Below, piece after piece: positions 12,068 to 53,065 of a stretch of DNA of 64,000 nt. Below the pieces are notes generated by a model. That model worked only from the letters and a program-made list of their open reading frames with translations, searched no databases and was not told where the DNA came from. The stretch lies in the NCBI GenBank assembly GCA_965644315.1, contig CBFFRQ010000081.1, positions 124,001 to 188,000 on the forward strand. Direction: 5' to 3'. The position numbers and the translations under genes were made by a program. The stretch's first letter is position 1. Every line of letters starts with the position of its first letter. The DNA is from Caecitellus pseudoparvulus. Its lineage: Eukaryota > Protista > Bigyra: Bicosoecida.

Positions 12068-12162
12068 GGCGCCGCGGAAGCGTTGGCGTGGTGAAGAGGG
12101 CCGAAGCAGTTTCCGCTACGTGCCCCAGCTCTCCTCCGATCGGAATCCTGCAGAGAGCTCAA

Positions 12163-13621: not shown

Positions 13622-13666
13622 AATGATGAGAGTCCTGGCAAAGAATCCACATTCGCACCAGTGACC

Positions 13667-15820: not shown

Positions 15821-16074
15821 AAAGTTGGTCAGTCATAATGAACATGAGGCGCTTTGCGCCACAAGGGTTGCAAGTTGAAGCACACGGTGATTTCTTCCTC
15901 ACAAGCCGGATTTCTTCACTGTCTCACGAACAATTGCACAATTTGAAAAAAAAATCCAACAAAGGCGACACAAATCCGACCTTTCAAGTTTCATTATACT
16001 CCTCTTCCACTTTTCAGACCCCTCGGGCATTTTTTCGCGCTCAATGTTCGGCGTGTTGGGCGCATTTGCTGAGC

Positions 16075-17124
16075 ATGGCAGCAGTCAGCGTCGACAGCCA
16101 CAACGAGCACTTTGCCACTCTCAAGGTGCTGCTGGACAAGCAGTTCCGTGTCTGTCATGATGATGCGTTCTGTGCAGTTTTATCAGCCATCGTCCGCTGC
16201 TGCGAGCCTGGGCAGGGCGTGTGGGCAAACACTGGCGTGGCGGGTCAATTTCCGCAGGTGAGCGTGCCTTTGCTGGCTGACGCAGCCGTGGTGGGGGCGC
16301 TACGCAATGGCATTGCAGCCTTGGCAACTTTGAGCTCCCTTTCAAGTGCTTGCGAGGCCGCCAAGGATGCTGACGCGCCGCTGGCTTTGCTTCACGGACG
16401 TGAGTGGTGGGATGCGCCTGAGTTTCAGCCAGTGCTGAGTTTGAAGGGGGGCAAGCAGACGCTGGGGCTGTGGAGGGACGACTCAGAGGGTGGCCCTGTG
16501 TGTGTTGTCCAACGCCGCAGTGGGGCAGAGCCCTCGCCGTACTCTGTCGTGGGCAGCAGTCTCGCTGGCGTGCTGGCTGAGAAGGTGGGAGCTGTGCCGG
16601 GCGCTGATGCGCTGCTGAGTGCGCTGCGCCAAGTGCCCGAGCCAGCGCAGGCCACGCACGGCACGGCGAAAGCTCGAAAAGGCGCCTCAGTGGGCAAGAC
16701 CTTGGACGGCATGGGTGTGGGCGTGCCGTGGAATGCTGAGGCGCAGGCTGGGTGGCGTCCGGTGCACCTGCCGCCGTCCGAGGTGGCTCGCCTGCTCGCA
16801 CGAGCGACGGTGCCGCCCAAGCTGCGTGAGCTGCTTACATTTGCTCACATTGCGAATGATGAGCGGGACCACGGCATGCCCCTGCAGCTTGGGCGGGATG
16901 TGTGGCGCCACAGCCTGTCCGCCACTGACACGGCGGTGAGCCTGCTCACACCGACGTACACTCTCCTGCAGCGGAAGGGCTTCGTGAAGCTGCTGAAGCG
17001 CCTTGCAGCATGGCGCAAGGAACTTGCCACCGCCGAGGGCAGCAAGTCATCGCCCGCTGGCGGTGTGAAACGCACTCGGGGAAGTGGCAGCGGGAAGGGG
17101 GCCTCAAAGAGACGAAAAGCCTGA
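16075..17124 (+). CDS. HPF1: Histone PARylation factor 1 homolog
   Basis: DAPEFQPV, GLWRD, KTLDGMGVGVP, GWRP and LLTFAHIANDERDHGMPLQLG parallel the HPF1 motifs DPPEFQ, GYFRD, KTFHGAGLVVP, GYRE and FANDECDYGMGLELG. Basic NLS-like C-terminus KRRK. Confidence 0.85.
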   Translation: MAAVSVDSHNEHFATLKVLLDKQFRVCHDDAFCAVLSAIVRCCEPGQGVWANTGVAGQFPQVSVPLLADAAVVGALRNGIAALATLSSLSSACEAAKDADAPLALLHGREWWDAPEFQPVLSLKGGKQTLGLWRDDSEGGPVCVVQRRSGAEPSPYSVVGSSLAGVLAEKVGAVPGADALLSALRQVPEPAQATHGTAKARKGASVGKTLDGMGVGVPWNAEAQAGWRPVHLPPSEVARLLARATVPPKLRELLTFAHIANDERDHGMPLQLGRDVWRHSLSATDTAVSLLTPTYTLLQRKGFVKLLKRLAAWRKELATAEGSKSSPAGGVKRTRGSGSGKGASKRRKA

Positions 17125-26654: not shown

Positions 26655-26932
26655 GGCGTGTGTGAGAACGGCGGCCAATTTCCGCACGGCACGCCGAGCC
26701 ACCCAACAGCGCACGCACTGCCACAGCGCAGGCAGCACTGGAGGAGTGCTGTTGTGAAGGACAGGATACAGCAGTTGCAAACCTCTTCGTGTCGTGTTGT
26801 GGCCGATGCCGCGGTTTGTGGAGGTGCACTTCATGTGCCTGCCTGCTGCGCTGCGAAGTGCATTCTTGCCAAGGCCGCTGCGCACACAACTGCGCAGCTG
26901 CAAACATGTGGAGTGCAAGGAAGGCAGGCCAT

Positions 26933-36470: not shown

Positions 36471-39400
36471 ATGTTTGGTTTGATGTCCATGCAGATCCTT
36501 GCTTGCCTCGCGGCGTTTGGGGCCTCGGTGGCGCCTCGTGCGTGGTGCCGGCAGCTGCTGCGTCGCTTGCGGCCGAGCACCCTTTCTTTCCCTCCCTTCC
36601 ACAGGCGAATCCAGGGCAAACTACTTCTTTTGTACGTGTGAAGCGCACCAGTGGACAAAGGCGCTGGTCGAGGCACGCACCGCTTCTTCGCTCCACTCGC
36701 AGATGATGACACACGGTTCACGCCAAACGTGTCTGGCCTGGGGAGCAGTCTCTCCCACAGCGGGCAGCTTCTTGCTCACTCGCACATGAACTACTCCGCG
36801 GCGTATGCCGGCACAGCAGATGTAGTGCAAGCGTCGTCTCACATCCACGAGGTGCCGCACGACCACCGTGCGTGGCTGTATGATGGCCCAGGTCGTGTCG
36901 GCGACCGCCTTCTAACAGCAGCAGGTCGCACCAGCTGGGCAGTGGGGATCGGTGGCAGGGTGGTGCTGTTCCGGGCGAACTCCTCTGTCTCCCCCTCAGC
37001 TGGCGGTGTCTCACCTGTGCCCACTGTGCAGGCGCTGCAGTCCTCTGGGCTGGGCATGGAGCCGTCGTCAAGTGGCCTGTATGCAGAGGCCGTGCAAGGG
37101 TCCACGCAGCACACACTTGACGCACAGCTGGAGCTGGGTGCGCTGATCGGCGAAGATCTCGCGCCCAATGTCTCTACTGTGCGCATGCTTGACCTGGCAG
37201 CAGCGCAGGGTGGAGCAGAGGACGTCCTTGCTCACGTGTATCGGCACGTCGCAAAAGCCGAGGAAGCTGCCGCGCAGGCGCGGTCCACAGCTTGGGGTGG
37301 GCTGTACGCTGCTTCCTTTCACATTGTCCTACACAATGCTACTGCCTTGCGGGTGGTTGTGGCACTCCGCCGAGTGCCCTTCGACTTGTGTGTCGCTTCC
37401 CCCGTGCAACCGTGTCTCAACTCGACCCAGCCTGGCTTTGCTTGGCGACGCGCCTTCCTGGCCGTGAGGGACTGGGCAAGCCCGTGGGATTGGGCTGCAT
37501 CCATTGACATCGATGGCGGCGACGCGTTGGCTGTGGGCGCACCAGGTGCAAACCGCGTGGACGTTGCCACGTGCAGCCATGTTGGAGAGCTGGTGCGGCA
37601 GCATGGACTCTCTTATCCCGCGGCTGAGCAGTGGGAGTTTACCCACGTGGCACATATTCCAACTCCTGACACGTCCCCAAATTATACCGCTGTCAGTGAT
37701 GGGAGCACGTATTCTCTCAGTGGCCTGGAGCGATTTGGCGCAGTTGTGCACTTGGACGAACGATTCCTCGTCGTGGCGGCGCCGAATCACCATGGGCTGC
37801 GCAACGACTTTGACACTGAAATGACGGTCCTACAGCTGACCGGAGGCCCGAGCAAGGGGGCAGTGTATGTGTTTGATGCCCCCCAGCGGCGGTACTTCTC
37901 GCCAAAAGGTCGTGCCTTTGACTTCACAGCGCGGCGATTTGGGGGCGCCTCTCCCCTGACCCAGCTGCCCTGGGGTGCAGCAGTCTCACAAGTCTGCATT
38001 GCTGGGCAGCCTGTCGCAGCACCGAGCTCCCCTTGCACTGCCCTGGCAACTCCTTTGAGGCCAGTGTCCAGGGCTGGCGCTCCAGCTGCATCGGCCGGGC
38101 CGCTGGGCATCTCCCTTGCCGTGCTGCACTTTCGTAGCTGGAGTTTGGTGGCCGTTGGGTCTGGAGACAAGCGCGTCATCATGCTGGCACTGGGAGACGA
38201 AGATGCAGTTCTGGGGAGGCAGGACCCTGCCCGTCCTGCGACACACTGGGTGGGCTGGCTCCTGCCACAGGATGGCTCGTCTGACTTTGGAGCTGAGGTG
38301 GCAGTGGGATTGGAGCACCTGTACATCGGCTCCCCCTCAGTCACCAACGCTGGTGTGGAGGAGCAGCCGTACGCGCTACCTGCGACTGCCCTGCCAGGCC
38401 GCATGTACGTTGCGCGGAATTGTGCGCCTGGCAGAGCATGGGTGCCCGGCCAACCAGCCGGCACCTCCGCCTACTTCGGTCGCTGCGGCAACTGTCCAGC
38501 AGGCACATTCTCACACGGCGGTACCGAAAGTGCTGCGAATATGTGCCGCCCCTGCCCCACTGCGCTGCCAGCGAACGCCGTTTGGGTTCGTGGCGGCAAC
38601 TGCGACATCCAGTGCATCTCTGGCTTCCACTACTTCTTGCAAGGGTCGGTGGACACTTGCGTCACTTGCGCAGCGTTCGCTTCCGCCCAAGGCTGGTTCC
38701 TGCCCGCCAATGCCTCATGGGTCGAAGGGGGCTCATCGTGTGACTGGGCCTGTGAGCCAGGGCTGGCTCTGAATGGAAACGGCACAGCGTGTGTGGTGCA
38801 ACAGGCCCCCCTGGCGCCCCTTACCCCCCATGCCTTGGAAGTCAATGCCTCTTCAGTGCTGCTGGCAGTGTGGCTGCCAACAGTTCTGCCTCGGGGTGCA
38901 CCGTTTACTTCTCTGCGCTTGGTGCTGCATGGAAGCAGGGGTGCTGGCGAATGGCGCCGCAACGTGAGCGTGGTCATTCTTCCCCACGAAGGCCGGTCTT
39001 TGCTCCCGCAGGCAAAACACCTGGGCGGAGCTTTCACGAAGCTTTCCTCAGCGCACGTGGCAGATGAAACTGCCCGTCAGGCTGGGCGCAATGTCTCCGC
39101 CTTCACCCTCACCGGTGTGCTTCTCACTGGGCTGTCGGCTGGGACCAACTTCAGCGTCTCTGCACAAGTCAAGCGCGCCTTGACCACCTTCGGGCAGCTG
39201 TCGCCCCCTTCTCCCACTTTCAAGACCACGCCCAGGAGAGACCCGCCGGTGTGCATGCCCCCTGCTCCCCTCGCAGTGGATGCAGTGTTTTCTTCAGCGA
39301 TACTTCTGCGCTGGCACGTGGTGGCCGTCCCCGCAGACTGGCAGGCTCAAGGCTGGGCACACCCGCGGCATGTCCATCACGTCCTTGGGGACTCGGAGGA

Positions 39401-42400
39401 GGGGTTCGTGTGTGTGTCTGCAGCTGGTGTGCAACTACCTGCGTGCAACGCGTCTGTAGCCCCCCCTCCCGCCGGTTCTGCACCGCTGAACCTCTCCACA
39501 TGTGTCGTTCTTGTGAACCAGAGCAGTCGCGCGCAGGGAAACCCCCTGGAGGCGCCTGAGTTGCCAGACACCGTGTGGGTCTCAGGCTTGCAGCCATCAA
39601 CAACGTATCAAATCGTGGCATGGGGAGTCTCGGCGAGTGGTGTGAGCTGGCCTTCAACTGGAGTCACCATCACTACTGCCCCGCCGTCCCCACCATCTCC
39701 ACCAACTCGCCTTAAGTGCGAGTCGTCTACTGCACCTCACGGCAGCGTGGATTTATCTTGGGCCCCACCCACCATCGGTGCGCAGGATGTGGAAGGGTAC
39801 ACCGTTGTTGCTGCCCGGCGCTTCAGAGGCTCCACACGTCCCAGCGGGGGCAGCGAGGTGCTGCCCGAGGAGGACTTCGCGCCCTATTATGGGCCCATCT
39901 TGGGTTTGCCGGAGCCAGGTCAGTTCCTTGGCGCCGACCTTGTGCACGGTGTTTTTGGTGCTGGTGCAGGCGATGTTTCGTCCAGCATGGATGCGAGTGC
40001 CTCAGAAGCACGCGCGGCCCAGCCAGGGGCTGACGTGTCAGACGACGTCTGGCGCCTAACCTCAGCAGAGTCATGGACCCCTGACCCTCAAGAATCTTGG
40101 GGCCTGCCTCTGTCCGCTGGCGCAGCCGATGCAACGACAGCAGCAGACGGCCACGGCCGCCTTCGCAGCATTCATGATCTGGTTGCCGTACGGCACGTAG
40201 CAGGAGCAGAATTGGCAGATGCTCTTGTTGCAGGTACACTCGGTCGATTGCACGTGACGCTGCCTGACGTGCTGGATGGGTCGACCGGGAAGAATGTGAC
40301 ACTGTTTGTGTTCGCGCGGAGCAGGCATGGCGTTAGCCTGCTTTCCGGTGGGTGTTCAGCCATGCCCGCACCGGCGAGCACTCCATCTCAGCCATCTTGG
40401 TCCCATGCCTACCATAACGTCACGAGAGTGACGGCATCCTCTGCTGAAGTCGCTTTTCGGCTTCCCGACTCTCTGGCTGGGTGGCGGTACCAAGACATAG
40501 TCGTGCACGTTGAAGCTGAGGCTCAGCGCCCAGGGGCCACACCCATTGTCAGTGAGCTGCCCCTGTTGAATTGCTTGCCTGTGCCCGGTTCGTGGGCGCC
40601 AGGCGGCAATCGGGTTCAGTCGCTCACGGTGTTGGGCTTGAGTCCCAGCACTCCGTACGCCATTCGCACCCGCCTGCGGCATTCTGCCCTTCCTGGTACT
40701 TCGCCGTTCTCAGAAGTGCTTCAGGTTTCCACCCATGCAGCCACGCGGCCTTCTACACCACAGAACGTGCGTGTATCCTTCCCAGCTGAGAGTCTACAGC
40801 CTCCGCTGCGCGTCCGGTGGACAGACCCTGCTGACACAGGGTCTGAAGCCCTGGTCGGGTTTGCTTTGGCGTGGTCTGGAGATTCCACTGCTCTGCAGCA
40901 GTGGTCAAGTAGCATTGCATCACATGAACTTCGCACTGCAACGTCAGGAGCAGCTGCCTTGTCTCAGTCGAAAATTGAAACTGTGAACGTTCTGTATTGC
41001 CGCTTCAGTGAGCCAGCAGTGGAGGTTCCTGGCAGTGCTTCGACGCCTGCGCAGCGAAGACTCGACCTTGTCGGGCTTGCCCCAGGCACGGTTGGCTTTT
41101 TACAGCTCTTGGCCGTGAATGACGCTGGGAGGGCAGTGGCATCAGGCGTGCTAGGGCCGTGGAGTGTGCCTCCGCGCCCGAGAAAAGACAGGCTGCGCGG
41201 GCCCGCCTTGCGGGTGCTGCAGAGCTCCTCCACGAGCCTGACCATTGGCATTGATGCCGCACTTGCACCGGCAGGCATGTGGACGGTCGGTGCAGCGGTG
41301 ACATTGGAAGCGGCATCGTCTGCTGGCGGCCCAGTGTTTTCCTTTGCCCCCAATGACACGCTGGTGCAGCTCCCCATTGCAGCCAGCCTGTTTGCAGCTG
41401 AGGCAGCTTTGGCGCGCTCACGCACAGCTCCCGCATGGGCACGGTTTGAGCAAGAATCGACACCGCGCCTCGCCGAGCACGGACCAAGAGCTTTTTTGGG
41501 CAGGGGTAGTTGGGACGCCCTTCTTGCTGCTGGCCTCAACTCGAGCCTGGTGTTTGCTCCATGTGGTGATTGGGGGCCATTGGCCGTAGTGTTACCGCAA
41601 ACAGCTGCCTGGGTGTCTGGCCCAATGGCCGATTCCATTCTGCACCTGCTTCGGGGCTCCTTGCACCTGGCGCCAGACGCGATGATGGAGCATGTATCCA
41701 GGAATCGGGCATGGAATTGCTCACCTCCAAGCCTTCCTCGGCGTGTGTCACCTGGTACTTTCGCTGTTACCAACCAGTCTCAGCGGCAGACAAACAGCTC
41801 AGCCTACTTGATTGTCGCAGGCCTGCGCAGTTCAACAGAGTACAGGGTAGAATCTCAGGTGATGCTGGCGTCAAATGACTCGCTCCACCACGTCATCGGG
41901 CCCCGGTCTTCTGGCGTCTGGACCCGAACGAGTTCAGCTGAACCCCGGTCTCCAGAGCTCATTGGCGGCATATTTACCTCGGAGCGTGGGTCTGCGCTAA
42001 ACAAGACAACGTTTTCCCTCCACATTCGCGTCCCTGAGTGGGGGACTGCTGGGGATTTCACAGTTTTGGCAGCAGTGGCAGCGCCAACTCCCCATCACGC
42101 AACTGACGCGCTGGGGAGCATCGTCCCTGCCCTGCCTGTCCAAGCGGAAGCTGTGGCAAGGAATCTCTCTGCTCCAGGAGGGGAAGTGGTTAATTGCTCA
42201 TCTTTGCTGCTCTTTCGCCCATTGCCTGGGGAAGGGGTGGTAGGCCATCGAGGTCGACCAGGGCTGACATTGGCCTTACCCCTGCAGCTCGGGGTGCAGC
42301 AAGTTGGCCCGACTGCTTGGGCAAATGTGACCGTGGCGCTGTCAGCCTGTTCTCTAGCTTCATCACATACCGAAGTCCCATCGCAGTGCAGTGCGCCTTC

Positions 42401-45400
42401 GGTGCACACATTCCACTTGCCACCTGGGTCAGCTTTGCCTGGAACATTGAATACGAGCAGCCTTCCCCCGTCTGCTGTGCAGAGCACCTGCTCTGGGTTC
42501 CCTGCTCTTGGGGTCCTGTCTGACCCCAACCAGCCACTCGCAGGGGTCGTAGAATCACCTGAACCGTCATGGATTGATCAAGTGCACCGATTCAACATCG
42601 CCCGCCGTAGGGGCACACCATCTCCACCTGGTCTTTCCTTTGCGCCCACGCTCCGGGCTGGCGGGTCCACTCTGAGCGTCGGCTGGGCTGCCCCACCCAG
42701 TTGGTCAGGCATGCAAGTGGACGGCTTCAATGTGATGATTCAGGCGCTTGGACCCGTTGACAACTCAACTGGTGATGCTGTGGACGCACTGACCTCGGTG
42801 TGGTCTCCTGAGTGCCAATTGGGGCAAGGGCAGGGACTTTGTGCAAAGCTCCCGGCTCAAGGAGCGTGGTGCTCTCACTCATGGCCCGCTGAGAATCTGA
42901 TCCACGTCACTGCTGTAGAGGCATTTGGGTGGCTGCGGGCGAATCAATCTTCAAGTGGGTCCAACCGCCAGTCTGCAAGCCACCCAAGTGTGTCCATTTC
43001 GACGGCACCCGATGGATTGTGGGAGCCGTCTCTTCGTCCCAATTCCATGGACTGCAGCACAGCCCCAGGGGGTGCCTGCTTTCATGCTTCCGCGACGTTT
43101 CCTGTGTGTGCAGGGGTGCAGTACAGCGTGTCAGTTTCAGCGGTCCAGCAGCTGGTTCCAGGGCTGCCGTCCCCCAGCTCCACTGTGCCTGTGCCGCTGC
43201 CAGTAGCTTCTCAAGGCACCCCTCCACCCATACCACCAGCCGCAACTCAGCTGCATCTTGCTCTTGAGAGCGAAACGGCCGTGTCCATGGCAATGATGGC
43301 GAGTATTCCTCTCAATCTGTGCCCTTCCCTGAGCAACACATCTTCAGCCTCCGGCACGTCGCTCCCTGGCTCAGGATCAACGAACTTGCTCGCATTGGTC
43401 GTTCGTGCCCGCACGTTGGCACCACTCTTTCGTGCGGGTATTTCAGAAGGTGCGCGGGTGCTAGCAGGCGGGGCTGAGACAGTCGGTGAGGCGCTGGGGG
43501 CAAGCACATCTGTTTCCGTCTCTGTGGGATCCAGCACGGTCGAGGTCGTGCCCCTCTCGCCAAGCAGCCTTTCAGTTGCCTCTGACAGCAGTGGGCGCTG
43601 GTTCCTACACACTCCGCTGGAGGTTTCGAATCTGCAGCCAAAGCTGGGTGTGGAAGTGGAGGTTGAGCTGCTCTCCCACCTAGATGACGCAGTTTGGAGG
43701 AGCCCTGCGTCGTCTCCTCTGGTACGCACCCCAAAACTCGACATCAGCAGCATCCCAGGGGTGCGGCCGGCGCAGCCCAGGGAGGGCCGCCAACTTCAAA
43801 CCACCCCTTCTTCAGCTTCATCGTCCCCAGCATCTGCCCCTGGGAACGTGTCTGTGCGGAACATCGAGCCTGGGCTCCTCGAGTTGACATGGGAGGACAG
43901 CACCGACCTCGGAGGAGACGCCCTTCTTTGCTACGAGGTCTCCGTCGCTGTGGATGGTCGCGTGAGCCGGCCATGCACTGCGAACTTGACCAGCACAGCC
44001 CATCCAACGTCCGGCGTCCTGTACAAGCCTGCGGAGGGTGCATGTGGGGTGACCTCTGCAGCGTCTGCCGCAGCCCCCCCTGATCCGAACATGCACGCTC
44101 CCTGGGCAGCGTATGGTGCTGGCGTCTTGGGCGGTCTTGAAGGCACGCTCTCGTTGCATGACCAGTACCTTGACTTCCCCCCCCCTCCAGCATCTGTTGG
44201 GCCGGCCCCGCGGGCAGGTGGGTTTGCTGTGGCCGAGTACGGCGAGTACCCGCCCGGATTCGACCCATCTGACCCCATTGCATCCCAAGATGTATCAGGG
44301 CAGAGTATTTACTCGTGGACATCTATTGGGTGTGTTCGGGAGACGTGGGAGCCGGGTCAGGCCTATCTCAGGGCCTCAGGGTGGAGCAATGCCGGTGCTG
44401 AGCCGCTACCACGCCCCGTCGAGCTGAGTATGGTCATGAGTGCAGGCAGCGTGCCAGCCACGATCATGAGTGGCGAGACACGCCTAAACGCGCTGCAGCC
44501 TGTGTCAGGCTCGAGTGTCCAAGGGAATGACACTGGCGACGCTGTGTGCCCTCCGGGAACGCTACCCAGCACAGGCTTGGCTGCAGGCTGCCTCCTGGGG
44601 GCCCCCTCTCCCGGGCCTATGACACCGCGCACGCTTCGACACCGAGTGCAGGTTGACCCGAACACGCTGTACCGTTTCCGCGTGCGAGCTGTGACGTCGC
44701 CTATTGAGGTGGAAACACAACTGGCTCTTCGTTCCGAAGTGGTCAGCAACGCGTCTGATTCCCGAAGGGGCTTGCGGCTTGCCCAGCACGCTTCCCCCCT
44801 CGAGCAAGTAGGGAAGGAGGGTGCAACTGCCCGCAATCGTAGGCGGCTGGCTCTGCGGGTCCCGGGGTTCCAGCTCGGCCCCACTCCCGAGTGCCTGCCG
44901 AACGCCACTGACTGCCTAATTTGGCACACTCAAGCAAGTATTGATTTGTCTCTCGTGCACCGGGGGCCGTCTTCAGACATACTATTTGCACTGACAGGCG
45001 TGCAGGCAGGAGCACTGACGCCAGGTGGCTTCTCTGTGACTCGGGTGGCGGACCCGTCCAGTATCCCTCCAGCCTCGCCAGCGCAGCCCATCATCGACGT
45101 TCAGATTGACATTCGTTTTACAGAAGCAGTCGCACCTCCTGGAAGCGAGTTTCTTTGTGCTGTCGACGCTGCACAGCTGTCAGTCGGTCACTGCCAGGTG
45201 TCGCAGCGGCCGCCATTTCTCGCGACGTTTTCAGCCCAAGACCCTCCGAGTACGCTACCAATATGTACTTCAACACCCCCTTCAGGGTACTCTCCACTCC
45301 CATTGGCTTATGAAGTTATGGACCCCAGCGACCCTGTCATTGGATTGCAGGGTCAACGGCAATTGACTCTCTCTCAGGCACAGGGTCTCCAGCGGGCCAG

Positions 45401-48400
45401 CTCGTACTTTGCCTCTATTGACATGCAGTCCTCCGCTGGCAACTCAAGTATAACTGCCTTGTTTGCAACATTCACGTCCAGGGTCCCAGGCAAGGTGGTG
45501 AATGTGTCCTCGCGGAGCCCTGGCTTAGGCAGGGGGGAGCACGCGTTGCATTTCTGCAGGCCGGCAAACGATGGAGGCTCTTATCCCACGTCTTATGAAA
45601 TTGACCTTGTTCCGAGCTCAGCTGTGAATCCGAACACGACACAGTGCTGTTCTACTGGCTTGCAGAGCCAGAGTGTTTCCCTTCTTGCTCTGCAGGCCCA
45701 GGGTGGAGTGCCTGCTGAGTGCACAACCGCGTATACCCAGTCTGATCTTCGCTCGCCTTTCGACAGCACCTGCCCCATCCACGCCAGCGGTGTCATTGCA
45801 TTGTGCCCAGAGGTGGGGTACACTGTAGGCATTCGACCCGTGTCTGTAGCTGGCCTGGGCATGGTGCGGGCCGAGTCGACTTTCAGCTACACCTGCCCAG
45901 GCAGCCCCATCCCATGCTCAGGTCATGGAACATGTGTAAAGTGGGATGGTGTGTGTGACTGCGATACTTCATGGGGTCTTGACGATTGCTCGGAATTGCT
46001 TGGGGTAGTCATTGATGCCCGGCTGTGGCTGGACGCGGGCGCCCTCATGGGTCTGGGTGGCGTTTCAGGGTTGGTGCTGGACCTCGGCGTTGGTCCCCAG
46101 TTCAGGACGTATGCGCGGAATCTCGTCGTTCATGTGCTCATCGACTCCCTTCTTCGTGCCGTCAACCAACCTGATGCCGAGTGGCAGGCTCTTCTCTCGT
46201 CTGCAGTGTTCGAGTTTGTGTCCACGCGGGTCAGTTCAGGTGAAGCTCTCCCTGGTGAGACAGTTGACACTTGGGGTTCTTTCTCATCAAGGGACCCACC
46301 TCAGCCTGGAACTCCACCAACGTCGCAGGCATTCATTGCTGCCCAAGTTTCCCCGACCCCAACTCTGTCCATTCGCGCAGTGCTCTCCCCGCGTCTCAAT
46401 GTGGCAGCGCACCTTGACCGCGTTGCACTGGAACTTGTTCGACTCATGCACGAGGGCCAAGCTGCCCTCCGCGGCATGGGGATTGTGTCGCTTGCTGTCC
46501 GCGACACCCGACGTGCGGCGCAAGTCAAGCAACGAGAAGTTGTGAATTTGCCACCGCCGACCACGTGTGCCACTCGAGGGACTTGTGCAGCGTGCGCAGA
46601 GGATGCATCCTGTGCTTGGGATTTGCAGCTGCGAGGCTGTGTGGCGGCGCCGTCCTTGTCGGAGCGGGGGTCTCAGCAGGTTCAGCGAGCCTTCCCCGCC
46701 CCAGGCACGGCTGCTCCCGGTGGTGGCACTCCCCTCGCAAGCCAGTTATCGCCCGCACTATCGACGCCCCCAGCGTATGTGTACACACCCCACGCTCGCA
46801 CGTGTGTCAATGACGCTGTGCGGAGGCAGCGTGAAGACATGGATCCGAGCAGCCCATTCACTGCCGAGTGGCGGCACTTGGATGGCAATACTTCTTTTGT
46901 GCGACAGCCAATCGGTACAATGTGGCTGTACGGCATTGACCGTTGCCAATGTCCAGTAGCGTGTGAGGCACTGTCCCAGCGCCTGGCCTTTCTGAGTGAA
47001 GGCGCGGGAGCAACGAGTGATGCTTCTGGCGGCTGTGCAGCCTGCGCGGCGCGGCCCGATTGCTTGTTCTGCCAAACTACGCAGACATGCTATGACCACG
47101 CAGATGACCGGCTGACATCGACCGACTTCCTAGAGAGCGCGTGCCCTGCCGTGAGCCTCTTCCCCAGGCAGCTGGAGTCTGGAAAACTGGTGACAGGCTG
47201 GGTTTCGCCGACAGCCCAGTCTTGGGCGGGTGGGTGTGGCAGCTCGGTGGTCTGCAGAGAAGAGTGCACAGCATGCGATGGCAAGACTTCCCAGGCAACG
47301 TGTGTGGACGACCTGGCCTGTGCATGGTGTGCGGATCCAAACCTCCCCGCGGGTGGGAAGTGTGCGGAAGGAAATGCCGCGGGATGGTATGATGGCGAGT
47401 CCTGCGCAGGGCAGTATTTCTATGGCTCCGTCACTGTTTCTTGCACGCTTGGCACCAACGTTGGAGCCACGCTGTCTCAGTGCCAGCTGTGTACTCTGGC
47501 GGGGGGCTCTCCCGGAGCGGTGGCCACCCCAGACACCCTAGCTTGTGGCTGGTGCCCAACGACGAAAACTTGCATGGTATCTGACTTGGCTTCCGAAGCG
47601 CCTCTGCTCAGTCATTGCCCAAGCAACGGTAGTTTGAGCGTGATGGGCATTTCCGACCCCAACGAGATGTCGGCCCAACAGACAGTGCTGGCTTCCTTGC
47701 TCCTGCCCCCTGTATCTGCCGGCATCCAACAACTACATTCCCTTCCGACTTCGACAACTCAAGCGCCGGACGAGGAAAGAGACAGTCTTCGCCAGTCACC
47801 ATTCGTTAAGCGCGCTGACTCAGGCACTTGCCCGGTGACAGCTTCCTTGCGTTGCAGCCAGCAAACTCTTTGTTCATCCTGCCTCAGCACTGACGTATCC
47901 GGACTGCAGGGTGCAGGGCCAGGCGACAAATGTCACTGGTGCCCGTCGTCTGTTTCGCCAGGGGGCAGGGTGGCAGGTCGTGACGATTCTGTTCAACTTG
48001 CTGCTGGGCAATCAGGCGGCCGCTGCATGCTGAGCAGTACGGCTGCGTCCGAGTGCCCTGTCGAAGTCTCAGACAGCTTCTGTGTGACTGGAGGGTGTGC
48101 TGAAGGCGCATCTCTGCTTCTCTCATTCACAAATGGATCGCTTCAGCTGGGCTCTGCCGGGCAGAGCCCTTGTACAGGTCGAGGTGTCGGCGCTGTTCTC
48201 ACCCCACGACTGACGTTGATCGAAGAGCCTGTGCAAGGGTCTGCCACGCTCGGGGGCCGATGGGACAGGCCGCTGCAGCTTCGTGGCAAGCAAGTGCACG
48301 ACCGAGGTTTGCAGAGTTCAGCGACCTGCACCCCGCTGGCGGCGGGCGCTCCAGTGCCCACGGTCTACGCCCCGGGATCTCAGTGCTCATGGATCATTGC

Positions 48401-50081
48401 TCCGACTGAGATTGACACGGCCACAGGACAAGGAGTGCGCAATAGCCACATCACCTTGCAGCTGACCCATGTCGATTTAGCTCCTGGGGACACTCTGTCA
48501 CTAACGGTGTCAGGGGACGCCAGACAGCCAGATGCCGAGAACACCATTCTTGTGCTCGCTGGAACATCTTTGCCTGGCTCAGAAGTTGTGCGTGGCTTGG
48601 GCACTGCGCAGGAGATCGAAGCGTGGGTAGAGCAAGTCTCTGGGTTGCAAGCAGCAGGAGCTGACACGTCGGCCTTGAAGCCACCCTCTCACGAGTCATT
48701 CGACAGTACTTGGAAGGATGTGAGCTTGACAACATCCAGTGGGTACATGCGGGTGTTCTTGAATGGACAGAATGGGGGTGGAGCAGGGATTCGTGGTGTT
48801 TACAATAGCCACAGGCCAGAGTCTGTGAACTATTACTTTGTCGCCGCGGTAGCCGTGAGCGTCTCTGCAGGGGTGATTGTCCTTGCATGCATCGGCCACA
48901 GGTACTGGCAGTATCGCAGGCGCGCTGCAGATGCCCGGGAGGCAGAGCGGGAGCTCGGCCTGTTGGACACTACTTCTGATGAGGAAGAAACTGATGGCGA
49001 TGACTCAGAGCTCGCTGTTCCCGCGTCAGTGCTGGTTGCCCTACCGACTTTTAGATTCGACTCAGACAAGATGGCACAGACCCCGCTTAAGGGCTTGGAG
49101 AAAGAAGACCTTACGTGCGCCATTTCGCTTGCCGAGTACTCGGAGGGAGACGCGATTACCGTACTTCCTTGTGGGCACCACTTCCTCCATGAGAGCATTT
49201 TACATTGGTTGAAGAGCAAGAAAATGTGCCCCATGTGTAAACGGGACGTATTAGAGACTTGGGTTTTGTATTCTTCCAAGGCCGGTGCTGATGATGGACC
49301 TGGCGGAGCGCAGGATCCGCTCGCTCTGGGCCCTGGTGTGCACAGGCATGTGAACCCTGAGCTCAAGTCCCAGGCAGATCGGGAACGCGACTTTGAGCTT
49401 GGGGTTGAGTCCACTGCACAGCGTCGCTCCCGAACCTTTTCCAACGCCTCTTCCCGCGGGGAAGGTGGTGCAGGCGAGCCTGACACTGCTCTGAGCGCCA
49501 ACATGTCCAGGACGCTGCCTGAAAGCAGCACTAGAGCGGCCACAGGGTTTGGAGCAGCAGCTCCTCGCAGGGGGCGGCGGATGCGCCCTGTTGTACTGTC
49601 TCCAAGTAGTGAACGGGGTTCTTCATCTGAAGACGAGTTTGTTCCTGTGTCTATTCCGAACCCACTCAGGAGTGCAGTTCATCACGGCTCGCAAGCAACC
49701 CTTGCAAGTGGGCCGCTTCCTCGACGACGAGGTCCAGAGGAAGGTAGCTCGACAGAGTCCCATGTCTCCACTGTCAGTTCACTCGGCAGCATCGTTGACT
49801 CAATGTCAGGAACTGCTGTCATCTCCATTCCCTCTCCCATCCGCCAACAGCGTCCGGGTCCTGCAACTGGCCAGCTACGTCAGCCACGCCACCAAGGCCG
49901 CATGGCAGCCCCGGAGCAGGGTTCCATCATTGACGCTCATCCAGCTTCACCACCTTCGCAGCGGTCAGTGCTTGCCATTCCTGCCGGCGCCGCATCAGGG
50001 CAGCGGCGGCAAGGGGCTGTCAGCGACGTGCGTGACCAAGTTAACCCCATGATGGTGCGCACGCATGGCCGAGCTCGCTGA
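36471..50081 (+). CDS. Giant (~4500 aa) type I receptor with cytosolic RING-H2-variant E3-like domain
   Basis: Signal-peptide-like exon (MFGLMSMQILACLAAFGASVAP) joined by introns 36538-36604 and 36632-36702. FG-GAP-like blades (LAVGAPGA, FGA...LVVAAP, GAVYVF, LYIGSP), CPAGTFS Cys-rich repeats, many FN3 (L.P.T.Y...V), EGF CSGHGTC...CDCDTSWGLDDCS, PSI repeats (CxxC...CxWC), CUB (YAPGSQCSWII), TM ~48830-48900, RING 49116-49241. Confidence 0.88.
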
Positions 50082-50561: not shown

Positions 50562-53065
50562 TCAAGCTCGCCCTGGGCTTGCCTTCATGAGGGGATTGCG
50601 GGTGTCGAAAGATTTGCTCACAGGAGCAGCAGCAGGGGCTTCAGGCGCCTCCTCATCGGAGTGCACACGCTGGGCATGCTTCTTGGGCGCGGCGGAGCGC
50701 CGTTTGTAGACAACCACAGCAGCGACGCCAACGGCTACCGCAGCAAGTGCGGCAACGATTCCACCCACAGCGCCAGCTGAGATGCCTGTACCTGGTGCAC
50801 CACCTCTGGGAGAAGCAGAGCCCCCTGATTCATCAACGGAGCCTGACTGAGACACCGTTGCAGAGCCAGAGACAGTTGCCTCTTGAAACGTGGCTGTCCA
50901 CTCGGAACTGCTGCCAGCCTCTTCTGATGCAGCAACATGCAGAGTGGACGCGAAAGTCCCATCTTGAACGGACCTATCAACGGTACCAGCGATGTCTTCC
51001 GCATCGTCCTCGTCATCGACATTGATTGTGACGTCCACCTCCAAGCCGCCATCTTGGAGGTGTCGGCGAAGTGCAGCTGAGTCACGAGAGCAAGGCTTTC
51101 GCAGCTCAACAATTACATCTTCGACCGATACACCTGCAATGCGTGCAACAACCTTGGCGATGAATGCGCGGATGCGATCATCTGAGGGAGCGTTCTCGCA
51201 CGAAACACCCTGAACCTGCATAGTAACGGAAACAACTGGGCGTGGCCGTGTGGTGGCCGACGGGCGAGGACGCTTAGGCGTAGGAGATGCAGTGCGGTCG
51301 GGGTCGCCGCCGTTGCCGTTGCCACCAGCGGAATCGCGTTTTGGCGTCGCAGATGCAGAAGGGCGGGTCGTATCGGGCTTGGGCGTAGGAGATGCAGTGC
51401 GGTCGGGGTCGCCGCCGTTGCCGCCAGTGGAGTCGTGCTTAGGCGTAGGAGATGCAGTGCGGTCAGGGTCGCCGCCGTTGCCGCCAGTGGAGTCGTGCTT
51501 GGGCGTAGGAGATGCAGTGCGGTCAGGGTCGCCGCCGTTGCCGCCAGTGGAGTCGTGCTTGGGCGTAGGAGATGCAGTGCGGTCAGGGTCGCCGCCGTTG
51601 CCGCCAGTGGAGTCGTGCTTGGGCGTAGGAGATGCAGTGCGGTCGGGGTCGCCGCCGTTGCCGCCAGTGGAGTCGTGCTTGGGTGTAGGGGATGCAGTGC
51701 GGTCGGGGTCGCCGCCGTTGCCGCCAGTGGAGTCGTGCTTGGGTGTAGGGGATGCAGTGCGGTCGGGGTCGCCGCCGTTGCCGCCAGTGGAGTCAGGGCG
51801 AGTGGTAGCCGTGGCTGAGGGCTGGGTGCCGTCACCACCGTTGCCGCCAGTGGAGTCAGGGCGAGTGGTAGCCGTGGCTGAGGGCTGGGTGCCGTCACCA
51901 CCGTTGCCGCCAGTGGAGTCAGGGCGAGTGGTAGCCGTGGCTGAGGGCTGGGTGCCGTCACCACCGTTGCCGCCAGTGGTGTCAGGGCGAGTGGTAGCCG
52001 TGGCTGAGGGCTGGGTGCCGTCACCGCCGTTGCCGCCAGTGGAGTCAGGGCGAGTGGTAGCCGTGGCTGAGGGCTGGGTGCCGTCACCACCGTTGCCGCC
52101 AGTGGAGTCAGGGCGAGTGGTAGCCGTGGCTGAGGGCTGGGTGCCGTCGCCGCCGTTGCCGCCAGTGGAGTCAGGGCGAGTGGTAGCCGTGGCTGAGGGC
52201 TGGGTGCCGTCACCGCCGTTGCCGCCAGTGGAGTCAGGGCGAGTGGTAGCTGTGGCTGAGGGGTGGGTGCCGTCGCCGCCGTTGCCGCCAGCTGCGTTGT
52301 GAGGCGAGGGGGTGGCTGAGGGCTGGGTGCCGTCACCGCCGTTGCCGCCAGTGGAGTCAGGGCGAGTGGTAGCCGTGGCTGAGGGCTGGGTGCCGTCACC
52401 GCCGTTGCCGCCAGTGGAGTCAGGGCGAGTGGTAGCCGTGGCTGAGGGCTGGGTGCCGTCACCGCCGTTGCCGCCAGTGGAGTCAGGGCGAGTGGTAGCC
52501 GTGGCTGAGGGCTGGGTGCCGTCACCACCGTTGCCGCCAGTGGAGTCGGGGCGAGTGGTAGCCGTGGCTGAGGGCTGGGTGCCGTCACCGCCGTTGCCGC
52601 CAGCTGCGTTGTGAGGCGAGGGCGTGGCAGACCGGTCAGGGTCACCGCCAGCGGGGTCTGGGTGTTTGGATGGAGATGGAGTCGGAGCAGGTTGGCTTGG
52701 GTCGTTTAATTGCCGCTGCGCACGGGTCGCGCCGTTGATTAGCGCAGCGTGAATGGTGGAAACGCCAATGTGAGCTGCCTCGGTTTGGCGTGTTGGAAGG
52801 GTATCCGCAGCACCCGCAGCAAGGTTTGCCAGACAAGCAAAGGTGAAACCTAGCGCAGCTAAAGTGAGCCAGAGGCCTGTGAAAGTAAAGATAATGAATG
52901 TGTTCACTCATTTGGCGCTTCGCCTGAGTCGACGCTTGCAAGTAGCACGAGTTCAACCAGATTGATGCAACATGCAGGTTGAGAGCAAACGCGGGCTGAG
53001 CGGAAGACCCGGCGAAAGCAGCACCTACCATGTCTCTTGGAAGCTGGCCGTGAATGAGTGACCAT
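50562..53065 (-). CDS. Mucin-like type I membrane protein A (repeats, SEA-like domain, TM)
   Basis: Exon 53065-53029 (MVTHSRPASKRH), intron 52877-53028 (GTAGGT...TCACAG, phase 1), signal peptide GLWLTLAALGFTFACLA, RQL, repeats, SEA-like domain, TM AVGGIVAALAAVAVGVAAVVVY, tail with RNPL. Confidence 0.85.
51375..52615 (-). repeat. Coding tandem repeats: ~7 x 60 bp (GGNGGDPDRTASPTPKHDST) and ~13 x 63 bp (GGNGGDGTQPSATATTRPDST)
   Basis: Directly visible: consecutive 60-nt lines from 51421 to 51780 are nearly identical, and a 63-nt period follows. Confidence 0.95.

What the first reader, a model, noticed from the sequence alone, without database searches (positions are those of the whole stretch)
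36471..50081. Giant adhesion-type receptor fused directly to a RING E3-like domain
Seen: a single ~4500-aa chain with propeller-like blades, Cys-rich repeats, an FN3 array, EGF, several PSI repeats, CUB, one TM, an ATL/RNF13-like 'LVALPTFRF' pre-RING motif and a RING. Known: animal attractin and MEGF8 (CUB/EGF/PSI ectodomains) act as substrate adaptors that recruit the separate RING ligase MGRN1 to ubiquitinate surface receptors, while known membrane RING-H2 ligases (RNF43/ZNRF3, ATL, RMR) have small ectodomains. Inference: this may be a self-contained receptor ubiquitin ligase in a protist, coupling extracellular recognition to ubiquitination.
Basis: partly seen in the sequence, partly recalled or inferred. 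Interest (0 to 1): 0.85.

Follow-up and report, generated by a model that had tools for sequence, protein, structure and literature searches.

The report
Giant receptor with built-in RING ligase
A marine stramenopile protist encodes a real, conserved protein of about 4,480 residues that joins a huge adhesion-type outer part through one membrane helix to an RNF13-like RING domain that has lost one of its two zinc sites, so it is a candidate single-chain receptor ubiquitin ligase from an uncharacterised protist family.

Summary
The observation largely holds. One frame of 4,479 codons (36642-50081, +) is open. It is intact in an independent metagenome assembly: 67 substitutions, no indel. It is collinear with two distant giants (4,920 and 4,511 aa).

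Supported parts:
- FN3 domains, but scattered and not a regular array
- an EGF
- about five PSI-like repeats
- a CUB domain next to the membrane
- one TM helix
- a RING nearest to RNF13 and RMR1

The N-terminal propeller is only weakly supported.

Two corrections:
It most likely belongs to a signal-peptide exon joined over a 114-135 nt intron. This is inferred from the orthologue and not shown by RNA.
- The RING ligands read C-S-C-H-L-S-C-C, so zinc site 1 is lost and site 2 is kept. The E2-contact residues Ile, Trp, Pro and Lys are conserved across the class.

The architecture is not unique. Cafeteria, environmental contigs, a diatom cluster and at least four other genes of this genome have a large ectodomain, a TM helix and a RING. 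This scan also noted one on another contig (s1-661279). No paper describing them was found. Ligase activity is inferred, not shown.

Verdict: a new variant of transmembrane RING E3s; interest 0.55.

The parts
36471..36537 (+). Putative exon 1 encoding the signal peptide (MFGLMSMQILACLAAFGASVAP). The orthologue's ATG aligns with the second ATG, at 36483.
   Evidence: The exon aligns without gaps to the orthologue's MYTFILLCLAASAVALAP exon. Both end at the same phase-1 donor: C|GTGCGT here and C|GTGAGT in L008. A third giant (L012) also has an upstream signal-peptide exon with a GTATGT donor. No RNA evidence was obtained.
36538..36672 (+). Putative intron holding the in-frame TGA (36639-41). The acceptor is either the AG at 36671-72, conserved with the orthologue, or the AG at 36650-51. 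The intron is 135 or 114 nt long.
   Evidence: Reading of the sequence. In L008 the only phase-compatible acceptor in this span is the homologous cgAG|G. A 75-nt GT..AG intron elsewhere in this genome shows that short introns occur. This part is inferred and not shown by RNA.
36673..50081 (+). Giant exon: the rest of the protein plus the stop codon TGA (50079-81).
   Evidence: The frame is open from 36642. P0171 from an ENA metagenome contig is 98.5% identical over 4,431 aa with no indel. The exon is collinear with P0001 and P0003.
36669..38411 (+). N-terminal region (aa 10-590), probably FG-GAP-type beta-propeller blades.
   Evidence: FG-GAP_2 scores 12.7-14.7 bits at equivalent places in the window, P0001 and P0163. 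Motifs FGAVVHLDERFLVVAAP, GAVYVFD and FGAEVAVGLEHLYIGSP are present. The atlas feature search gives 0.93 to FG-GAP_2 clusters. The AF2 model failed.
38412..38777 (+). Cys-rich repeats (aa 591-712), TNFR- or ephrin-receptor-like.
   Evidence: The profile hits HVEM 1jma at E 0.0094. Ephrin_rec_like is weak. There are 13 invariant Cys across four family members. AF2 pLDDT is 70-83 here only.
38778..45881 (+). Middle region (aa 713-3080), beta-rich, with scattered FN3 domains at aa 726-856, 1019-1056, 1373-1501 and 2400-2485.
   Evidence: Pfam fn3 scores 30.8 and 29.8 bits on pieces. A family HMM scores 70, 82 and 42 bits. The atlas features point to FN3/Ig-like at 0.90, which is weak.
45894..45989 (+). 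EGF-like domain (aa 3085-3116).
   Evidence: Six-Cys EGF spacing. EGF_2 scores 18.9 bits, E 0.002. The domain is conserved in the orthologues, and relatives show EGF_Teneurin hits.
45990..46541 (+). Unassigned domain between the EGF and the PSI repeats (aa 3117-3300).
   Evidence: No family hit. It is 35% identical to P0001.
46542..48122 (+). PSI-like repeat region (aa 3301-3827), about five repeats.
   Evidence: C..C...C.WC cores lie at aa 3309, 3532, 3601 and 3738. Pfam PSI scores 13 bits here, but 24.5 bits in P0001 and 23.4 bits in P0003, both over the 23.1 cut-off. There are 30+ invariant Cys/Trp columns.
48123..48815 (+). CUB domain with inserts (aa 3828-4058), ending just before the TM helix.
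   Evidence: The family profile hits cubilin at 1.8e-6, PCPE-1 at 5e-6 and neuropilin-2. Foldseek hits Kremen at 7e-4. VIA gives Z 9.3 to 8.3 for a run of CUB domains. Pfam CUB is over its cut-off in relatives P0040 and P0116.
48825..48899 (+). Single transmembrane helix (aa 4062-4086), with a positive cluster on the C-terminal side.
   Evidence: This is the only hydropathy peak above 1.7, with a value of 2.65. AF2 models a helix with pLDDT 81-97.
48900..49112 (+). Cytosolic linker with an acidic Ser/Thr cluster (TTSDEEETDGDDSE) and the conserved pre-RING motif (ALPTFRF...QTPL).
   Evidence: The family consensus is PxFxF.......TPL. The stretch is partly alignable to the pre-RING part of RNF13.
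49113..49241 (+). One-zinc RING (aa 4158-4200). The ligands read C4159, S4162, C4177, H4179, L4182, S4185, C4196 and C4199.
   Evidence: zf-RING_2 scores 41.3 bits. RNF13 5zbu scores E 6.9e-11 by sequence. Foldseek gives E 9e-6 with TM 0.83. VIA gives Z 10.7-11.2.
49242..50078 (+). C-terminal tail (aa 4201-4479). The first ~55 residues are conserved and helical. The rest is Ser/Pro/Arg/Gly-rich and probably disordered.
   Evidence: Identity to P0001 is 50% over aa 4207-4260. AF2 models a helix after the RING. No Pfam hit.

Best explanation
This is one gene of a marine stramenopile. It has a short signal-peptide exon, one short intron and a 13.4-kb exon. The product is a type I membrane protein.

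Outside the membrane, about 4,050 residues form an adhesion or recognition stalk in this order: FG-GAP-like blades, TNFR-like Cys-rich repeats, scattered FN3 or Ig-like domains, an EGF, about five PSI repeats, and a CUB domain next to the membrane.

Inside, about 70 residues after the single TM helix, sits a RING. It derives from the RNF13 / RMR / ATL-like RING-H2 type, keeps only the second zinc site, and keeps the E2-binding surface.

The most likely working (inferred): the cytosolic RING recruits a ubiquitin-charged E2. It then ubiquitinates the receptor's own tail or neighbouring membrane proteins. Binding or clustering of the ectodomain is thereby coupled to ubiquitin-dependent endocytosis or turnover. 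This would make it a receptor-type E3 in one chain, analogous to ZNRF3/RNF43 and to the two-chain attractin/MEGF8-MGRN1 system.

Shown: the gene, its architecture, its conservation and the domain folds. Inferred: the splice, the topology, E2 binding, ligase activity and the ligand.
For: - The open frame and its end are established.
- An independent assembly, P0171, is 98.5% identical with no indel.
- Strain differences are 19 synonymous to 15 non-synonymous.
- Orthologues P0001 and P0003 are collinear from the N-terminus to past the RING, and P0001 shares the upstream Redoxin neighbour.
- The signal-peptide exon and donor are conserved.
- There is a single TM helix with positive residues on the inside.
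- The RING matches by Pfam, by PDB sequence and by fold. RNF13 and RMR1 are the top matches.
- Pre-RING plus RING is the best conserved block: 57.5% and 46.8% identity with 0-1 gaps.
- I, W, P and K/R at the E2-contact and linchpin positions are invariant across the whole one-zinc class, although ligands 2, 5 and 6 vary. All four cytosolic Cys are RING ligands.
- The CUB domain is supported by profile and by fold.
- Relatives with canonical RING-H2 domains carry the same fn3-EGF-PSI-CUB-TM-RING order.
Against: - Zinc site 1 has lost three of its four ligands, so the domain could be inactive. No assay and no E2 docking was possible.
- No RNA covers the proposed intron or shows a single transcript. 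The only RNA-library signal is five short metatranscriptome contigs inside the ORF.
- The N-terminal and middle parts are poorly assigned.
- The ligand, the localisation and the substrates are unknown. The nearest solved RINGs, RNF13 and RMR1, belong to endosomal or vacuolar proteins, not to surface receptors.
Confidence: 0.55

Rival explanations
1. The protein is an adhesion or recognition receptor whose degenerate RING is a dead relic. It may be a pseudo-ligase that only scaffolds or binds partners. The protein works purely as a surface adhesin or matrix receptor and does not itself transfer ubiquitin.
For: Ligands 2, 5 and 6 of zinc site 1 are S, L and S. Across the class these positions drift between S/T, A/D/E/S/T and S/A/G. 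Pfam scores are lower than those of canonical relatives: 36-41 bits against 50-54 bits.
Against: The RING block is the most conserved part of a 4,479-aa protein. Site 2 and the E2-contact I, W, P and K/R residues are invariant in all members of the class. From established knowledge, U-box and SP-RING domains are active without site 1. AF2 models the domain at pLDDT 94-97 with a RING fold.
Confidence: 0.25
2. The one-zinc domain works as an SP-RING-like ligase for SUMO or another ubiquitin-like protein, not for ubiquitin.
For: The ligand layout, with site 1 absent and C-H-C-C of site 2 kept after a C-x-I-[ST] start, is that of the Nse2/PIAS SP-RING. Pfam zf-Nse gives sub-threshold hits in every class member, from 14 to 26.5 bits against a cut-off of 27.
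Against: zf-RING_2 always scores higher. The nearest sequences and structures are ubiquitin RING-H2 ligases, with RNF13 at 36% identity. Canonical RING-H2 relatives share the flanking FPxFxF...TPL motif, so the class derives from RING-H2. A membrane-anchored SUMO E3 would be unusual.
Confidence: 0.07
3. The protein is an endomembrane sorting receptor of the RMR/RNF13 kind. It would cycle between the Golgi and endosome or vacuole and carry lumenal cargo, and would not be a cell-surface receptor.
For: The RING is closest to the PA-TM-RING proteins RNF13 and RMR1. An acidic Ser/Thr cluster lies between the TM helix and the RING, which is a typical trafficking signal.
Against: No PA domain was found. 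A 4,050-residue ectodomain with FG-GAP-like, FN3, EGF, PSI and CUB domains and 43 N-glycosylation sequons is typical of surface adhesion proteins.
Confidence: 0.1
4. The chain is a gene-model or assembly artefact, made of two or more genes or a chimeric contig read as one.
For: No transcript evidence spans the gene. The 5' end needs a splice.
Against: 4,479 codons without a stop in 61% GC DNA. The same frame is found in independent metagenome contigs and in three separate assemblies. End-to-end collinearity with P0001 at 32-58% identity runs across the CUB-TM-RING junction.
Confidence: 0.02

Closest known systems
PA-TM-RING ligases (RNF13, Goliath/GRAIL family; plant RMR1)
   Same: Both are type I single-pass proteins with a cytosolic RING-H2-type domain shortly after the TM helix. 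These are the nearest solved RINGs: RNF13 5zbu/5zc4 at E 6.9e-11 and 34-36% identity, and RMR1 7bvw. A hydrophobic pre-RING LP..F-type motif is shared.
   Different: Their lumenal part is a small PA domain of about 150 aa. Here it is about 4,050 aa of adhesion-type domains with no PA domain. Their RING binds two zincs, whereas here site 1 is lost.
Attractin/MEGF8 with MGRN1 (receptor-like E3 made of adaptor plus separate RING ligase)
   Same: Both have a large ectodomain with PSI and EGF modules and a CUB-like domain directly before the single TM helix. The MEGF8/ATRN 'Stem' is CUB-like (bioRxiv 10.1101/2025.09.11.675358). Both illustrate the idea of coupling an ectodomain to ubiquitination at the membrane.
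   Different: Here the RING is in cis. There is no MASRPF motif and no Kelch or C-type lectin hit. No sequence relation beyond shared domain types is shown. The RING type is RNF13-like, not MGRN1-like.
ZNRF3/RNF43
   Same: Both are single-chain transmembrane RING E3s with a ligand-binding ectodomain. The ZNRF3 RING is among the sequence hits (9ozx at 2.4e-7).
   Different: ZNRF3/RNF43 have a small PA-like ectodomain and a canonical two-zinc RING, and they are animal-specific Wnt regulators.
SP-RING (Nse2, PIAS), U-box, and the plant 'RING-S/T' modified type
   Same: All involve loss of zinc ligands with the RING fold retained. The SP-RING keeps only the site made by ligands 3, 4, 7 and 8. RING-S/T has Ser or Thr at ligand 2 and/or 6 (PMC5240574). 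The start motif C-P/A-I-S/T is shared.
   Different: This domain scores best as RING-H2 and sits in a RING-H2 family. Unlike the U-box it keeps site 2. Unlike RING-S/T it has also lost ligand 5. zf-Nse stays below its cut-off.
Uncharacterised protist proteins: Cafeteria KAA0149027.1 'RING-type domain-containing protein', P0001, P0003, P0163, and a diatom Kelch-RING cluster
   Same: These belong to the same family. They share homologous CUB-TM-RING parts, the giants also share the N-terminus, and Cafeteria has the same one-zinc pattern.
   Different: They are shorter (2,200-2,950 aa) or have other ectodomain modules. Several keep a canonical RING-H2. None has a described function.

Membership tests
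RING-H2 finger (Pfam zf-RING_2, C3H2C3) | Profile match over the curated cut-off | tested here: met
   36.1 bits on the whole protein and 41.3 bits on a piece, against a cut-off of 27.3.
RING-H2 finger (Pfam zf-RING_2, C3H2C3) | Eight metal ligands C-C-C-H-H-C-C-C binding two zincs in a cross-brace | tested here: not met
   Anchored on RNF13, the ligands read C-S-C-H-L-S-C-C. Site 1 keeps one ligand of four, and site 2 is complete.
RING-H2 finger (Pfam zf-RING_2, C3H2C3) | RING fold | tested here: met
   AF2 pLDDT is 94-97. Foldseek TM is 0.79-0.88 to RNF13, RMR1, RNF38 and RNF12. VIA gives Z 10.7-11.2 with rmsd 1.6-2.1 over 70-74 residues.
RING-H2 finger (Pfam zf-RING_2, C3H2C3) | E2-contact residues (Ile after ligand 1, Trp of the helix, Pro after ligand 7) and a basic linchpin after ligand 8 | tested here: met
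   I4161, W4189, P4197 and K4200 are present and are invariant in all one-zinc class members. Their role is taken from established RING-E2~Ub structures, not tested here.
RING-H2 finger (Pfam zf-RING_2, C3H2C3) | E3 ubiquitin ligase activity | not testable with these tools
   This needs an in vitro assay. Docking to an E2 was not run because the UBC4/5-type E2 genes of this genome are split by introns.
PA-TM-RING (RNF13/Goliath/RMR) | Lumenal protease-associated (PA) domain | tested here: not met
   No PA hit on the whole protein or on pieces.
PA-TM-RING (RNF13/Goliath/RMR) | Single TM helix followed by a RING-H2 of the RNF13 type | tested here: met
   The TM helix is at aa 4062-4086 and the RING at aa 4158-4200. 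RNF13 is the best PDB hit.
Attractin/MEGF8 adaptors of MGRN1 | Cytosolic MASRPF(A) motif that links to MGRN1 | tested here: not met
   No MASRPF or loose variant occurs in this protein or in the three paralogues.
Attractin/MEGF8 adaptors of MGRN1 | Ectodomain with Kelch propeller, CUB, EGF, PSI and (in attractin) a C-type lectin domain | tested here: inconclusive
   PSI, EGF and CUB are present. No Kelch or lectin hit was found, and the propeller here looks FG-GAP-like.
Attractin/MEGF8 adaptors of MGRN1 | CUB-like Stem domain directly before the TM helix | tested here: met
   A CUB fold ends a few residues before the TM helix. The Stem description comes from 10.1101/2025.09.11.675358. No direct structural comparison with MEGF8 was possible.
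SP-RING (Nse2/PIAS) | One zinc site only (ligands 3, 4, 7, 8), with site 1 replaced | tested here: met
   The pattern is C-S-C-H-L-S-C-C.
SP-RING (Nse2/PIAS) | Profile match (zf-Nse / zf-MIZ) over the cut-off | tested here: not met
   zf-Nse scores 14-17.6 bits against 27, and zf-RING_2 scores far higher.
U-box | No zinc ligands at either site | tested here: not met
   Site 2 (C4177, H4179, C4196, C4199) is intact and invariant. There is no U-box Pfam hit.
RING-S/T modified type (plants) | Ser or Thr at ligand 2 and/or 6, with the other ligands intact | tested here: inconclusive
   S is at ligands 2 and 6, as in RING-S/T (definition from PMC5240574). However, ligand 5 is Leu, and the domain derives from RING-H2, not RING-HC.
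CUB domain | Profile and fold match to CUB | tested here: met
   Pfam CUB is not hit in the window itself but scores 22.3-22.4 bits (cut-off 21.4) in relatives P0040 and P0116. The family profile hits cubilin, PCPE-1 and neuropilin at 1.8e-6 to 2e-3. VIA gives Z 8.3-9.3.
PSI (plexin repeat) | Profile match over the cut-off | tested here: inconclusive
   The window scores 13 bits against 23.1. The aligned regions of P0001 (24.5 bits) and P0003 (23.4 bits) pass. The Cys/Trp cores are conserved. The profile found nothing in the PDB.
Fibronectin type III | Profile match over the cut-off | tested here: met
   52.7 bits overall, and 30.8 and 29.8 bits on single pieces.
FG-GAP / integrin-alpha-type beta-propeller | Repeated FG-GAP blades forming a propeller | tested here: inconclusive
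   Only sub-threshold FG-GAP_2 hits, three to four motif copies and a language-model lead are available. The AF2 model had pLDDT 36.

The most novel reading that the evidence does not exclude
Stramenopile flagellates, and perhaps other protists, may use a family of single-chain receptor ligases in which a giant adhesion ectodomain directly drives a cytosolic one-zinc RING. Contact with prey, a surface or another cell would then be converted into ubiquitin-dependent uptake or receptor turnover without a separate ligase. The one-zinc domain would be a living intermediate between RING-H2 and U-box/SP-RING that is still an active E3.
Probability: 0.25. Interest if true: 0.75.

Novelty: new variant of a known kind. 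Interest (0 to 1): 0.55.

Why it matters
Receptor-type ubiquitin ligases are known from a few animal and plant systems: ZNRF3/RNF43, MEGF8/attractin with MGRN1, and the PA-TM-RING proteins. This gene belongs to an unstudied protist family that puts an adhesion-scale ectodomain, with a CUB domain at the membrane as in MEGF8 and attractin, on the same chain as the RING.

If it is active, it would show that direct coupling of outside recognition to ubiquitination arose independently and on a much larger scale in protists.

The family also holds both canonical RING-H2 members and members that have lost zinc site 1 while keeping the E2 surface. That is a natural series for asking how RING domains turn into U-box or SP-RING-like domains. 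The Cafeteria homologue offers a culturable organism in which to test it.

Tried and rejected
- **RNA test of the 5' intron and of one transcript.** The only RNA-library run held five short contigs inside the ORF and none at the intron. The run of unknown kind (X6) carried the unspliced genomic form. There is no verdict either way.
- **AlphaFold of the N-terminal 751 aa with a 4-sequence alignment.** The model had pLDDT 36 and was unusable, so no fold search was made with it.
- **Profile of the N-terminal region against PDB sequences.** Only the Cys-rich part hit, matching HVEM.
- **Profile of the PSI region against PDB sequences.** No hit at E up to 1.
- **Internal repeats by self-BLAST.** None were found. 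An iterated family FN3 HMM found only three domains. 'FN3 array' was therefore downgraded.
- **MASRPF motif.** Absent.
- **MEGF8/attractin structures.** They did not appear among the fold matches, so no direct comparison of the Stem domain was possible.
- **Complex prediction of the RING with an E2.** Not run. The UBC4/5-type E2 genes of this genome are split into exons, a joined model may not be submitted, and the one single-exon piece (Rad6-like, L013) lacks helix 1.
- **Alternative genetic code as an explanation of the in-frame TGA.** Rejected. The ORF holds no TGA, TAA or TAG in 4,479 codons and itself ends in TGA.
- **Literature.** Five searches found no description of a fused FN3/PSI/CUB-TM-RING protein. 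This covers the held library only.

Full report
**What is in the sequence**

On the + strand one frame is open for 4,479 codons, from 36642 to 50078, and ends with TGA at 50079-81. The window is 59-68% GC. It carries ordinary eukaryotic genes (calpain, HPF1, a gephyrin-like gene, an amidase, BipA) on both strands. The genome is 30.6 Mb in 215 contigs. Its HSP90 finds oomycetes and diatoms as the best named relatives, at only 72-75% identity. The DNA also occurs in several marine metagenomes. The organism is therefore a marine stramenopile without a close named relative. This rests on best hits, not on a tree.

**Is it one real gene?**

Yes, with high confidence.
- An ENA metagenome contig encodes the same protein from the first in-frame ATG (P0171, 4,431 aa). 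It has 67 substitutions and no indel.
- Genomic contigs of other runs cover the first 6 kb without indels. Of the 34 listed differences inside the ORF for one strain, 19 are synonymous and 15 are not. This is fewer non-synonymous changes than the roughly 3:1 excess expected without constraint.
- A 4,920-aa protein from another assembly (P0001, locus L008) aligns from residue 10 to beyond the RING at 32-58% identity. It has the same upstream Redoxin neighbour.
- A third giant (P0003, 4,511 aa) aligns at the N-terminal Cys-rich part and from the PSI region to the RING.
- The alignments run straight across the CUB-TM-RING junction.

**The 5' end**

The orthologue locus has an ATG exon 136 bases upstream of its big frame. 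It encodes MYTFILLCLAASAVALAP and ends in C|GTGAGT. The window has MFGLMSMQILACLAAFGASVAP ending in C|GTGCGT at the aligned position. The two exons align without gaps from the ATG (the window's second ATG, 36483) to the donor, and the alignment breaks down after it.

With this phase-1 donor, the only compatible acceptor in that span of the orthologue is cgAG|G inside the aligned 'RG' codons. The window has the same cgAG|G at 36671-72. A second compatible AG lies at 36650-51.

P0003's locus also has an upstream signal-peptide exon with a GTATGT donor. The shorter relative P0163 starts directly with a signal-peptide-like sequence. A 75-nt GT..AG intron in a Rad6-like E2 gene shows that short introns exist in this genome.

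I therefore read the gene as exon 1 (36471 or 36483 to 36537), an intron of 114-135 nt that holds the TGA, and one 13.4-kb exon. This is inferred. The one reads call gave no RNA over the intron.

**Domains, from the N-terminus**

- **aa 10-590.** Only weak evidence supports FG-GAP-type blades. FG-GAP_2 scores 12.7-14.7 bits at equivalent places in three family members. Motifs such as FGAVVHLDERFLVVAAP and GAVYVFD are present. A language-model lead scores 0.93, with the tool's own caveats. The AlphaFold model of this part was useless, with pLDDT 36 on four sequences.
- **aa 591-712.** Cys-rich repeats of the TNFR or ephrin-receptor kind (HVEM E 0.009).
- **aa 713-3080.** This is not a regular FN3 array. 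Pfam and a family HMM find FN3 domains at aa 726-856, 1019-1056, 1373-1501 and 2400-2485. Self-comparison shows no repeats. The rest is unassigned, with only a weak FN3/Ig-like lead.
- **aa 3085-3116.** A six-Cys EGF. Pfam is just under its cut-off, the spacing is exact, and the domain is conserved.
- **aa 3117-3300.** Unassigned.
- **aa 3301-3827.** About five PSI-like repeats. The window scores below the cut-off, but the aligned regions of both orthologues pass it, and the Cys/Trp columns are invariant.
- **aa 3828-4058.** A CUB domain with inserts.
  - The family consensus carries the CUB hallmarks Y.P...C.W.I.P, DL..GD.L.V.DG and G.GF.A.Y.
  - The family profile finds only CUB proteins in the PDB: cubilin at 1.8e-6, PCPE-1 at 5e-6, and neuropilin-2.
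  - The AlphaFold model (17 sequences, mean pLDDT 76) matches CUB domains of Kremen, enteropeptidase, neuropilin, PCPE-1, TSG-6 and C1s, at Foldseek E 7e-4 and VIA Z 8.3-9.3.
- **aa 4062-4086.** The only hydrophobic helix, followed by RYWQYRRR.
- **Linker.** An acidic Ser/Thr cluster, then the conserved pre-RING motif (family consensus PxFxF.......TPL).
- **aa 4158-4200.** The RING.
- **Tail.** About 280 residues, of which the first ~55 are conserved.
- **Overall.** The ectodomain has 105 Cys and 43 N-glycosylation sequons. The cytosolic part has 4 Cys, all of them RING ligands.

**The RING**

It passes Pfam zf-RING_2. Its best solved relatives are RNF13 (E 6.9e-11 by sequence, 34-36% identity, TM 0.83-0.85), Arabidopsis RMR1, RNF12, RNF38 and ZNRF3.

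Anchored on RNF13, however, the eight metal positions read C-S-C-H-L-S-C-C. Zinc site 1 (ligands 1, 2, 5, 6) keeps one ligand, and site 2 (ligands 3, 4, 7, 8) is intact.

The same loss is seen in P0001, P0003, P0005, P0007, P0009 and the Cafeteria protein. All of them read C-[ST]-C-H-x-[SAG]-C-C, often with a U-box- or Nse2-like 'CPIT' start. A small paralogue in this genome shows it too. Other family members (P0004, P0034, P0040, P0116, P0163, Cyanophora P0042) and most RINGs of this genome are canonical.

In every one-zinc member four residues are unchanged: the Ile two residues after ligand 1, the Trp of the helix, the Pro after ligand 7 and a Lys/Arg after ligand 8. In solved RING-E2~Ub complexes these are the E2 contacts and the linchpin; that is established knowledge, not tested here. 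The pre-RING plus RING block is also the best conserved part of the protein (57.5% and 46.8% identity).

This is the pattern expected of a working E2-binding domain that no longer needs site 1, as in U-box and SP-RING domains. A decaying relic would not show it. The nearest named modified type is the plant 'RING-S/T', with Ser or Thr at ligand 2 and/or 6 (PMC5240574). This domain has lost ligand 5 as well.

**How common is the architecture?**

An exhaustive HMMER search with the EGF-to-RING part found only 20 cluster representatives below 1e-10. Among the hits were:
- the two giants;
- 2,200-2,400-aa proteins, including Cafeteria roenbergensis/burkhardae KAA0149027.1, annotated only as 'RING-type domain-containing protein';
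- environmental proteins in which Pfam itself calls fn3, EGF, PSI, CUB and RING in that order (P0040 and P0116; the 2,946-aa P0163 also shares the N-terminal region).

A search of the ESM Atlas by shape adds a diatom cluster of 58 members that combines an attractin-like Kelch propeller with a RING.

In this genome four more ORFs have a large ectodomain, one TM helix and a canonical RING-H2. They are 960, 1,183, 1,552 and 1,986 aa long. Cysteine richness was checked for the three larger ones, and one of them carries strong PSI repeats.

The fusion of a big ectodomain to a RING is therefore a recurrent, uncharacterised protist theme, not a one-off. Five literature searches found no description of it.

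**Most likely working**

The protein is a type I surface protein whose ectodomain binds something outside the cell, such as prey, a substrate or another cell. Its cytosolic one-zinc RING recruits a ubiquitin-charged E2 and marks the receptor's own tail or neighbouring membrane proteins. Binding or clustering is thereby coupled to endocytosis or turnover.

This is the logic of ZNRF3/RNF43 and of MEGF8/attractin with MGRN1. A further structural parallel is that MEGF8 and attractin also place a CUB-like 'Stem' directly before the TM helix.

It is an analogy, not membership. There is no MASRPF motif, no Kelch or lectin domain and no PA domain. Ligase activity, the E2, the ligand and the localisation are all inferred.

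The rivals are a dead RING on a pure adhesin (0.25), an endomembrane sorting receptor of the RMR/RNF13 kind (0.10), an SP-RING-like SUMO ligase (0.07) and an artefact (0.02).

The exons were handled apart by reference. No RING-E2 docking was run, because the suitable E2 genes are split by introns.

**Verdict**

The chain, the TM helix, the RING, the CUB domain, the EGF, the PSI repeats and some FN3 domains are there. The start, the 'array', the propeller and the RING type need correction. This is a new variant of transmembrane RING E3s in an unstudied family. It is moderately surprising to a ubiquitin specialist and is testable in Cafeteria.

Noticed in passing
window 50562-52907 (-) and 53521-62307 (-): Two large ORFs (781 and 2,928 aa) lie downstream, convergent with this gene, and have no Pfam hit. 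The 54-62 kb stretch is open in several frames on both strands, which points to a repetitive, GC-rich, mucin-like gene. Earlier notes of this scan call them mucin paralogues.
   Followed up: partly
G000 contigs C29 (L009 3050-7705 -), C31 (L010 2005-7962 +), C94 (L011 3314-6862 -), C89 (L033): Four more ORFs of 960-1,986 aa have a large ectodomain, one TM helix 75-105 residues before a canonical RING-H2. Cysteine richness was checked for L009-L011 only. L009 has PSI at 44 bits and PSI_integrin at 34.5 bits, and L011 has a weak IPT/TIG hit. This genome has a small family of receptor-type RING proteins.
   Followed up: partly
G000:C52:91055-91261 (L002/L031) and G000:C68:1205336-1205479 (L038): Two further RINGs of this genome lack zinc site 1. 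Their ligand patterns are C-S-C-H-S-A-C-C in a small protein and D-S-C-H-H-S-C-C. The other ten complete RINGs among the nearest hits in this genome are canonical; four more were aligned only in part. The loss therefore affects a subset, not the whole lineage.
   Followed up: partly
ESM Atlas cluster (row 1): A cluster of 58 mostly diatom proteins of about 920 aa combines an attractin/Kelch-type beta-propeller with zf-RING_2. It aligns to the CUB-TM-RING model over 206 residues. This looks like another fused ectodomain-RING architecture in stramenopiles.
   Followed up: no
window 24657-26918 (-): A TypA/BipA GTPase has an N-terminal extension of about 136 residues before the GTP_EFTU domain, which suggests an organelle-targeted copy.
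   Followed up: no
window 15808-17121 (+): A homologue of histone PARylation factor 1 (HPF1, 84 bits) is present in this stramenopile.
   Followed up: no
window 12001-14000: GC drops to 0.53 in a window that is otherwise 0.59-0.68 GC. The dip lies between the calpain gene and the gephyrin-like gene and is not explained.
   Followed up: no
window 45990-46541 (ORF aa 3117-3300): A conserved stretch of about 180 residues between the EGF and the first PSI repeat has almost no Cys and matches no family. It may be a distinct, undescribed ectodomain module.
   Followed up: no
L013 1369-1908 (G000:C91): A Rad6/UBE2A-like E2 is split by a 75-nt GTAAGG...CAG intron after the N-terminal helix. Most other UQ_con matches in this genome are also split into two or three exons.
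   Followed up: partly
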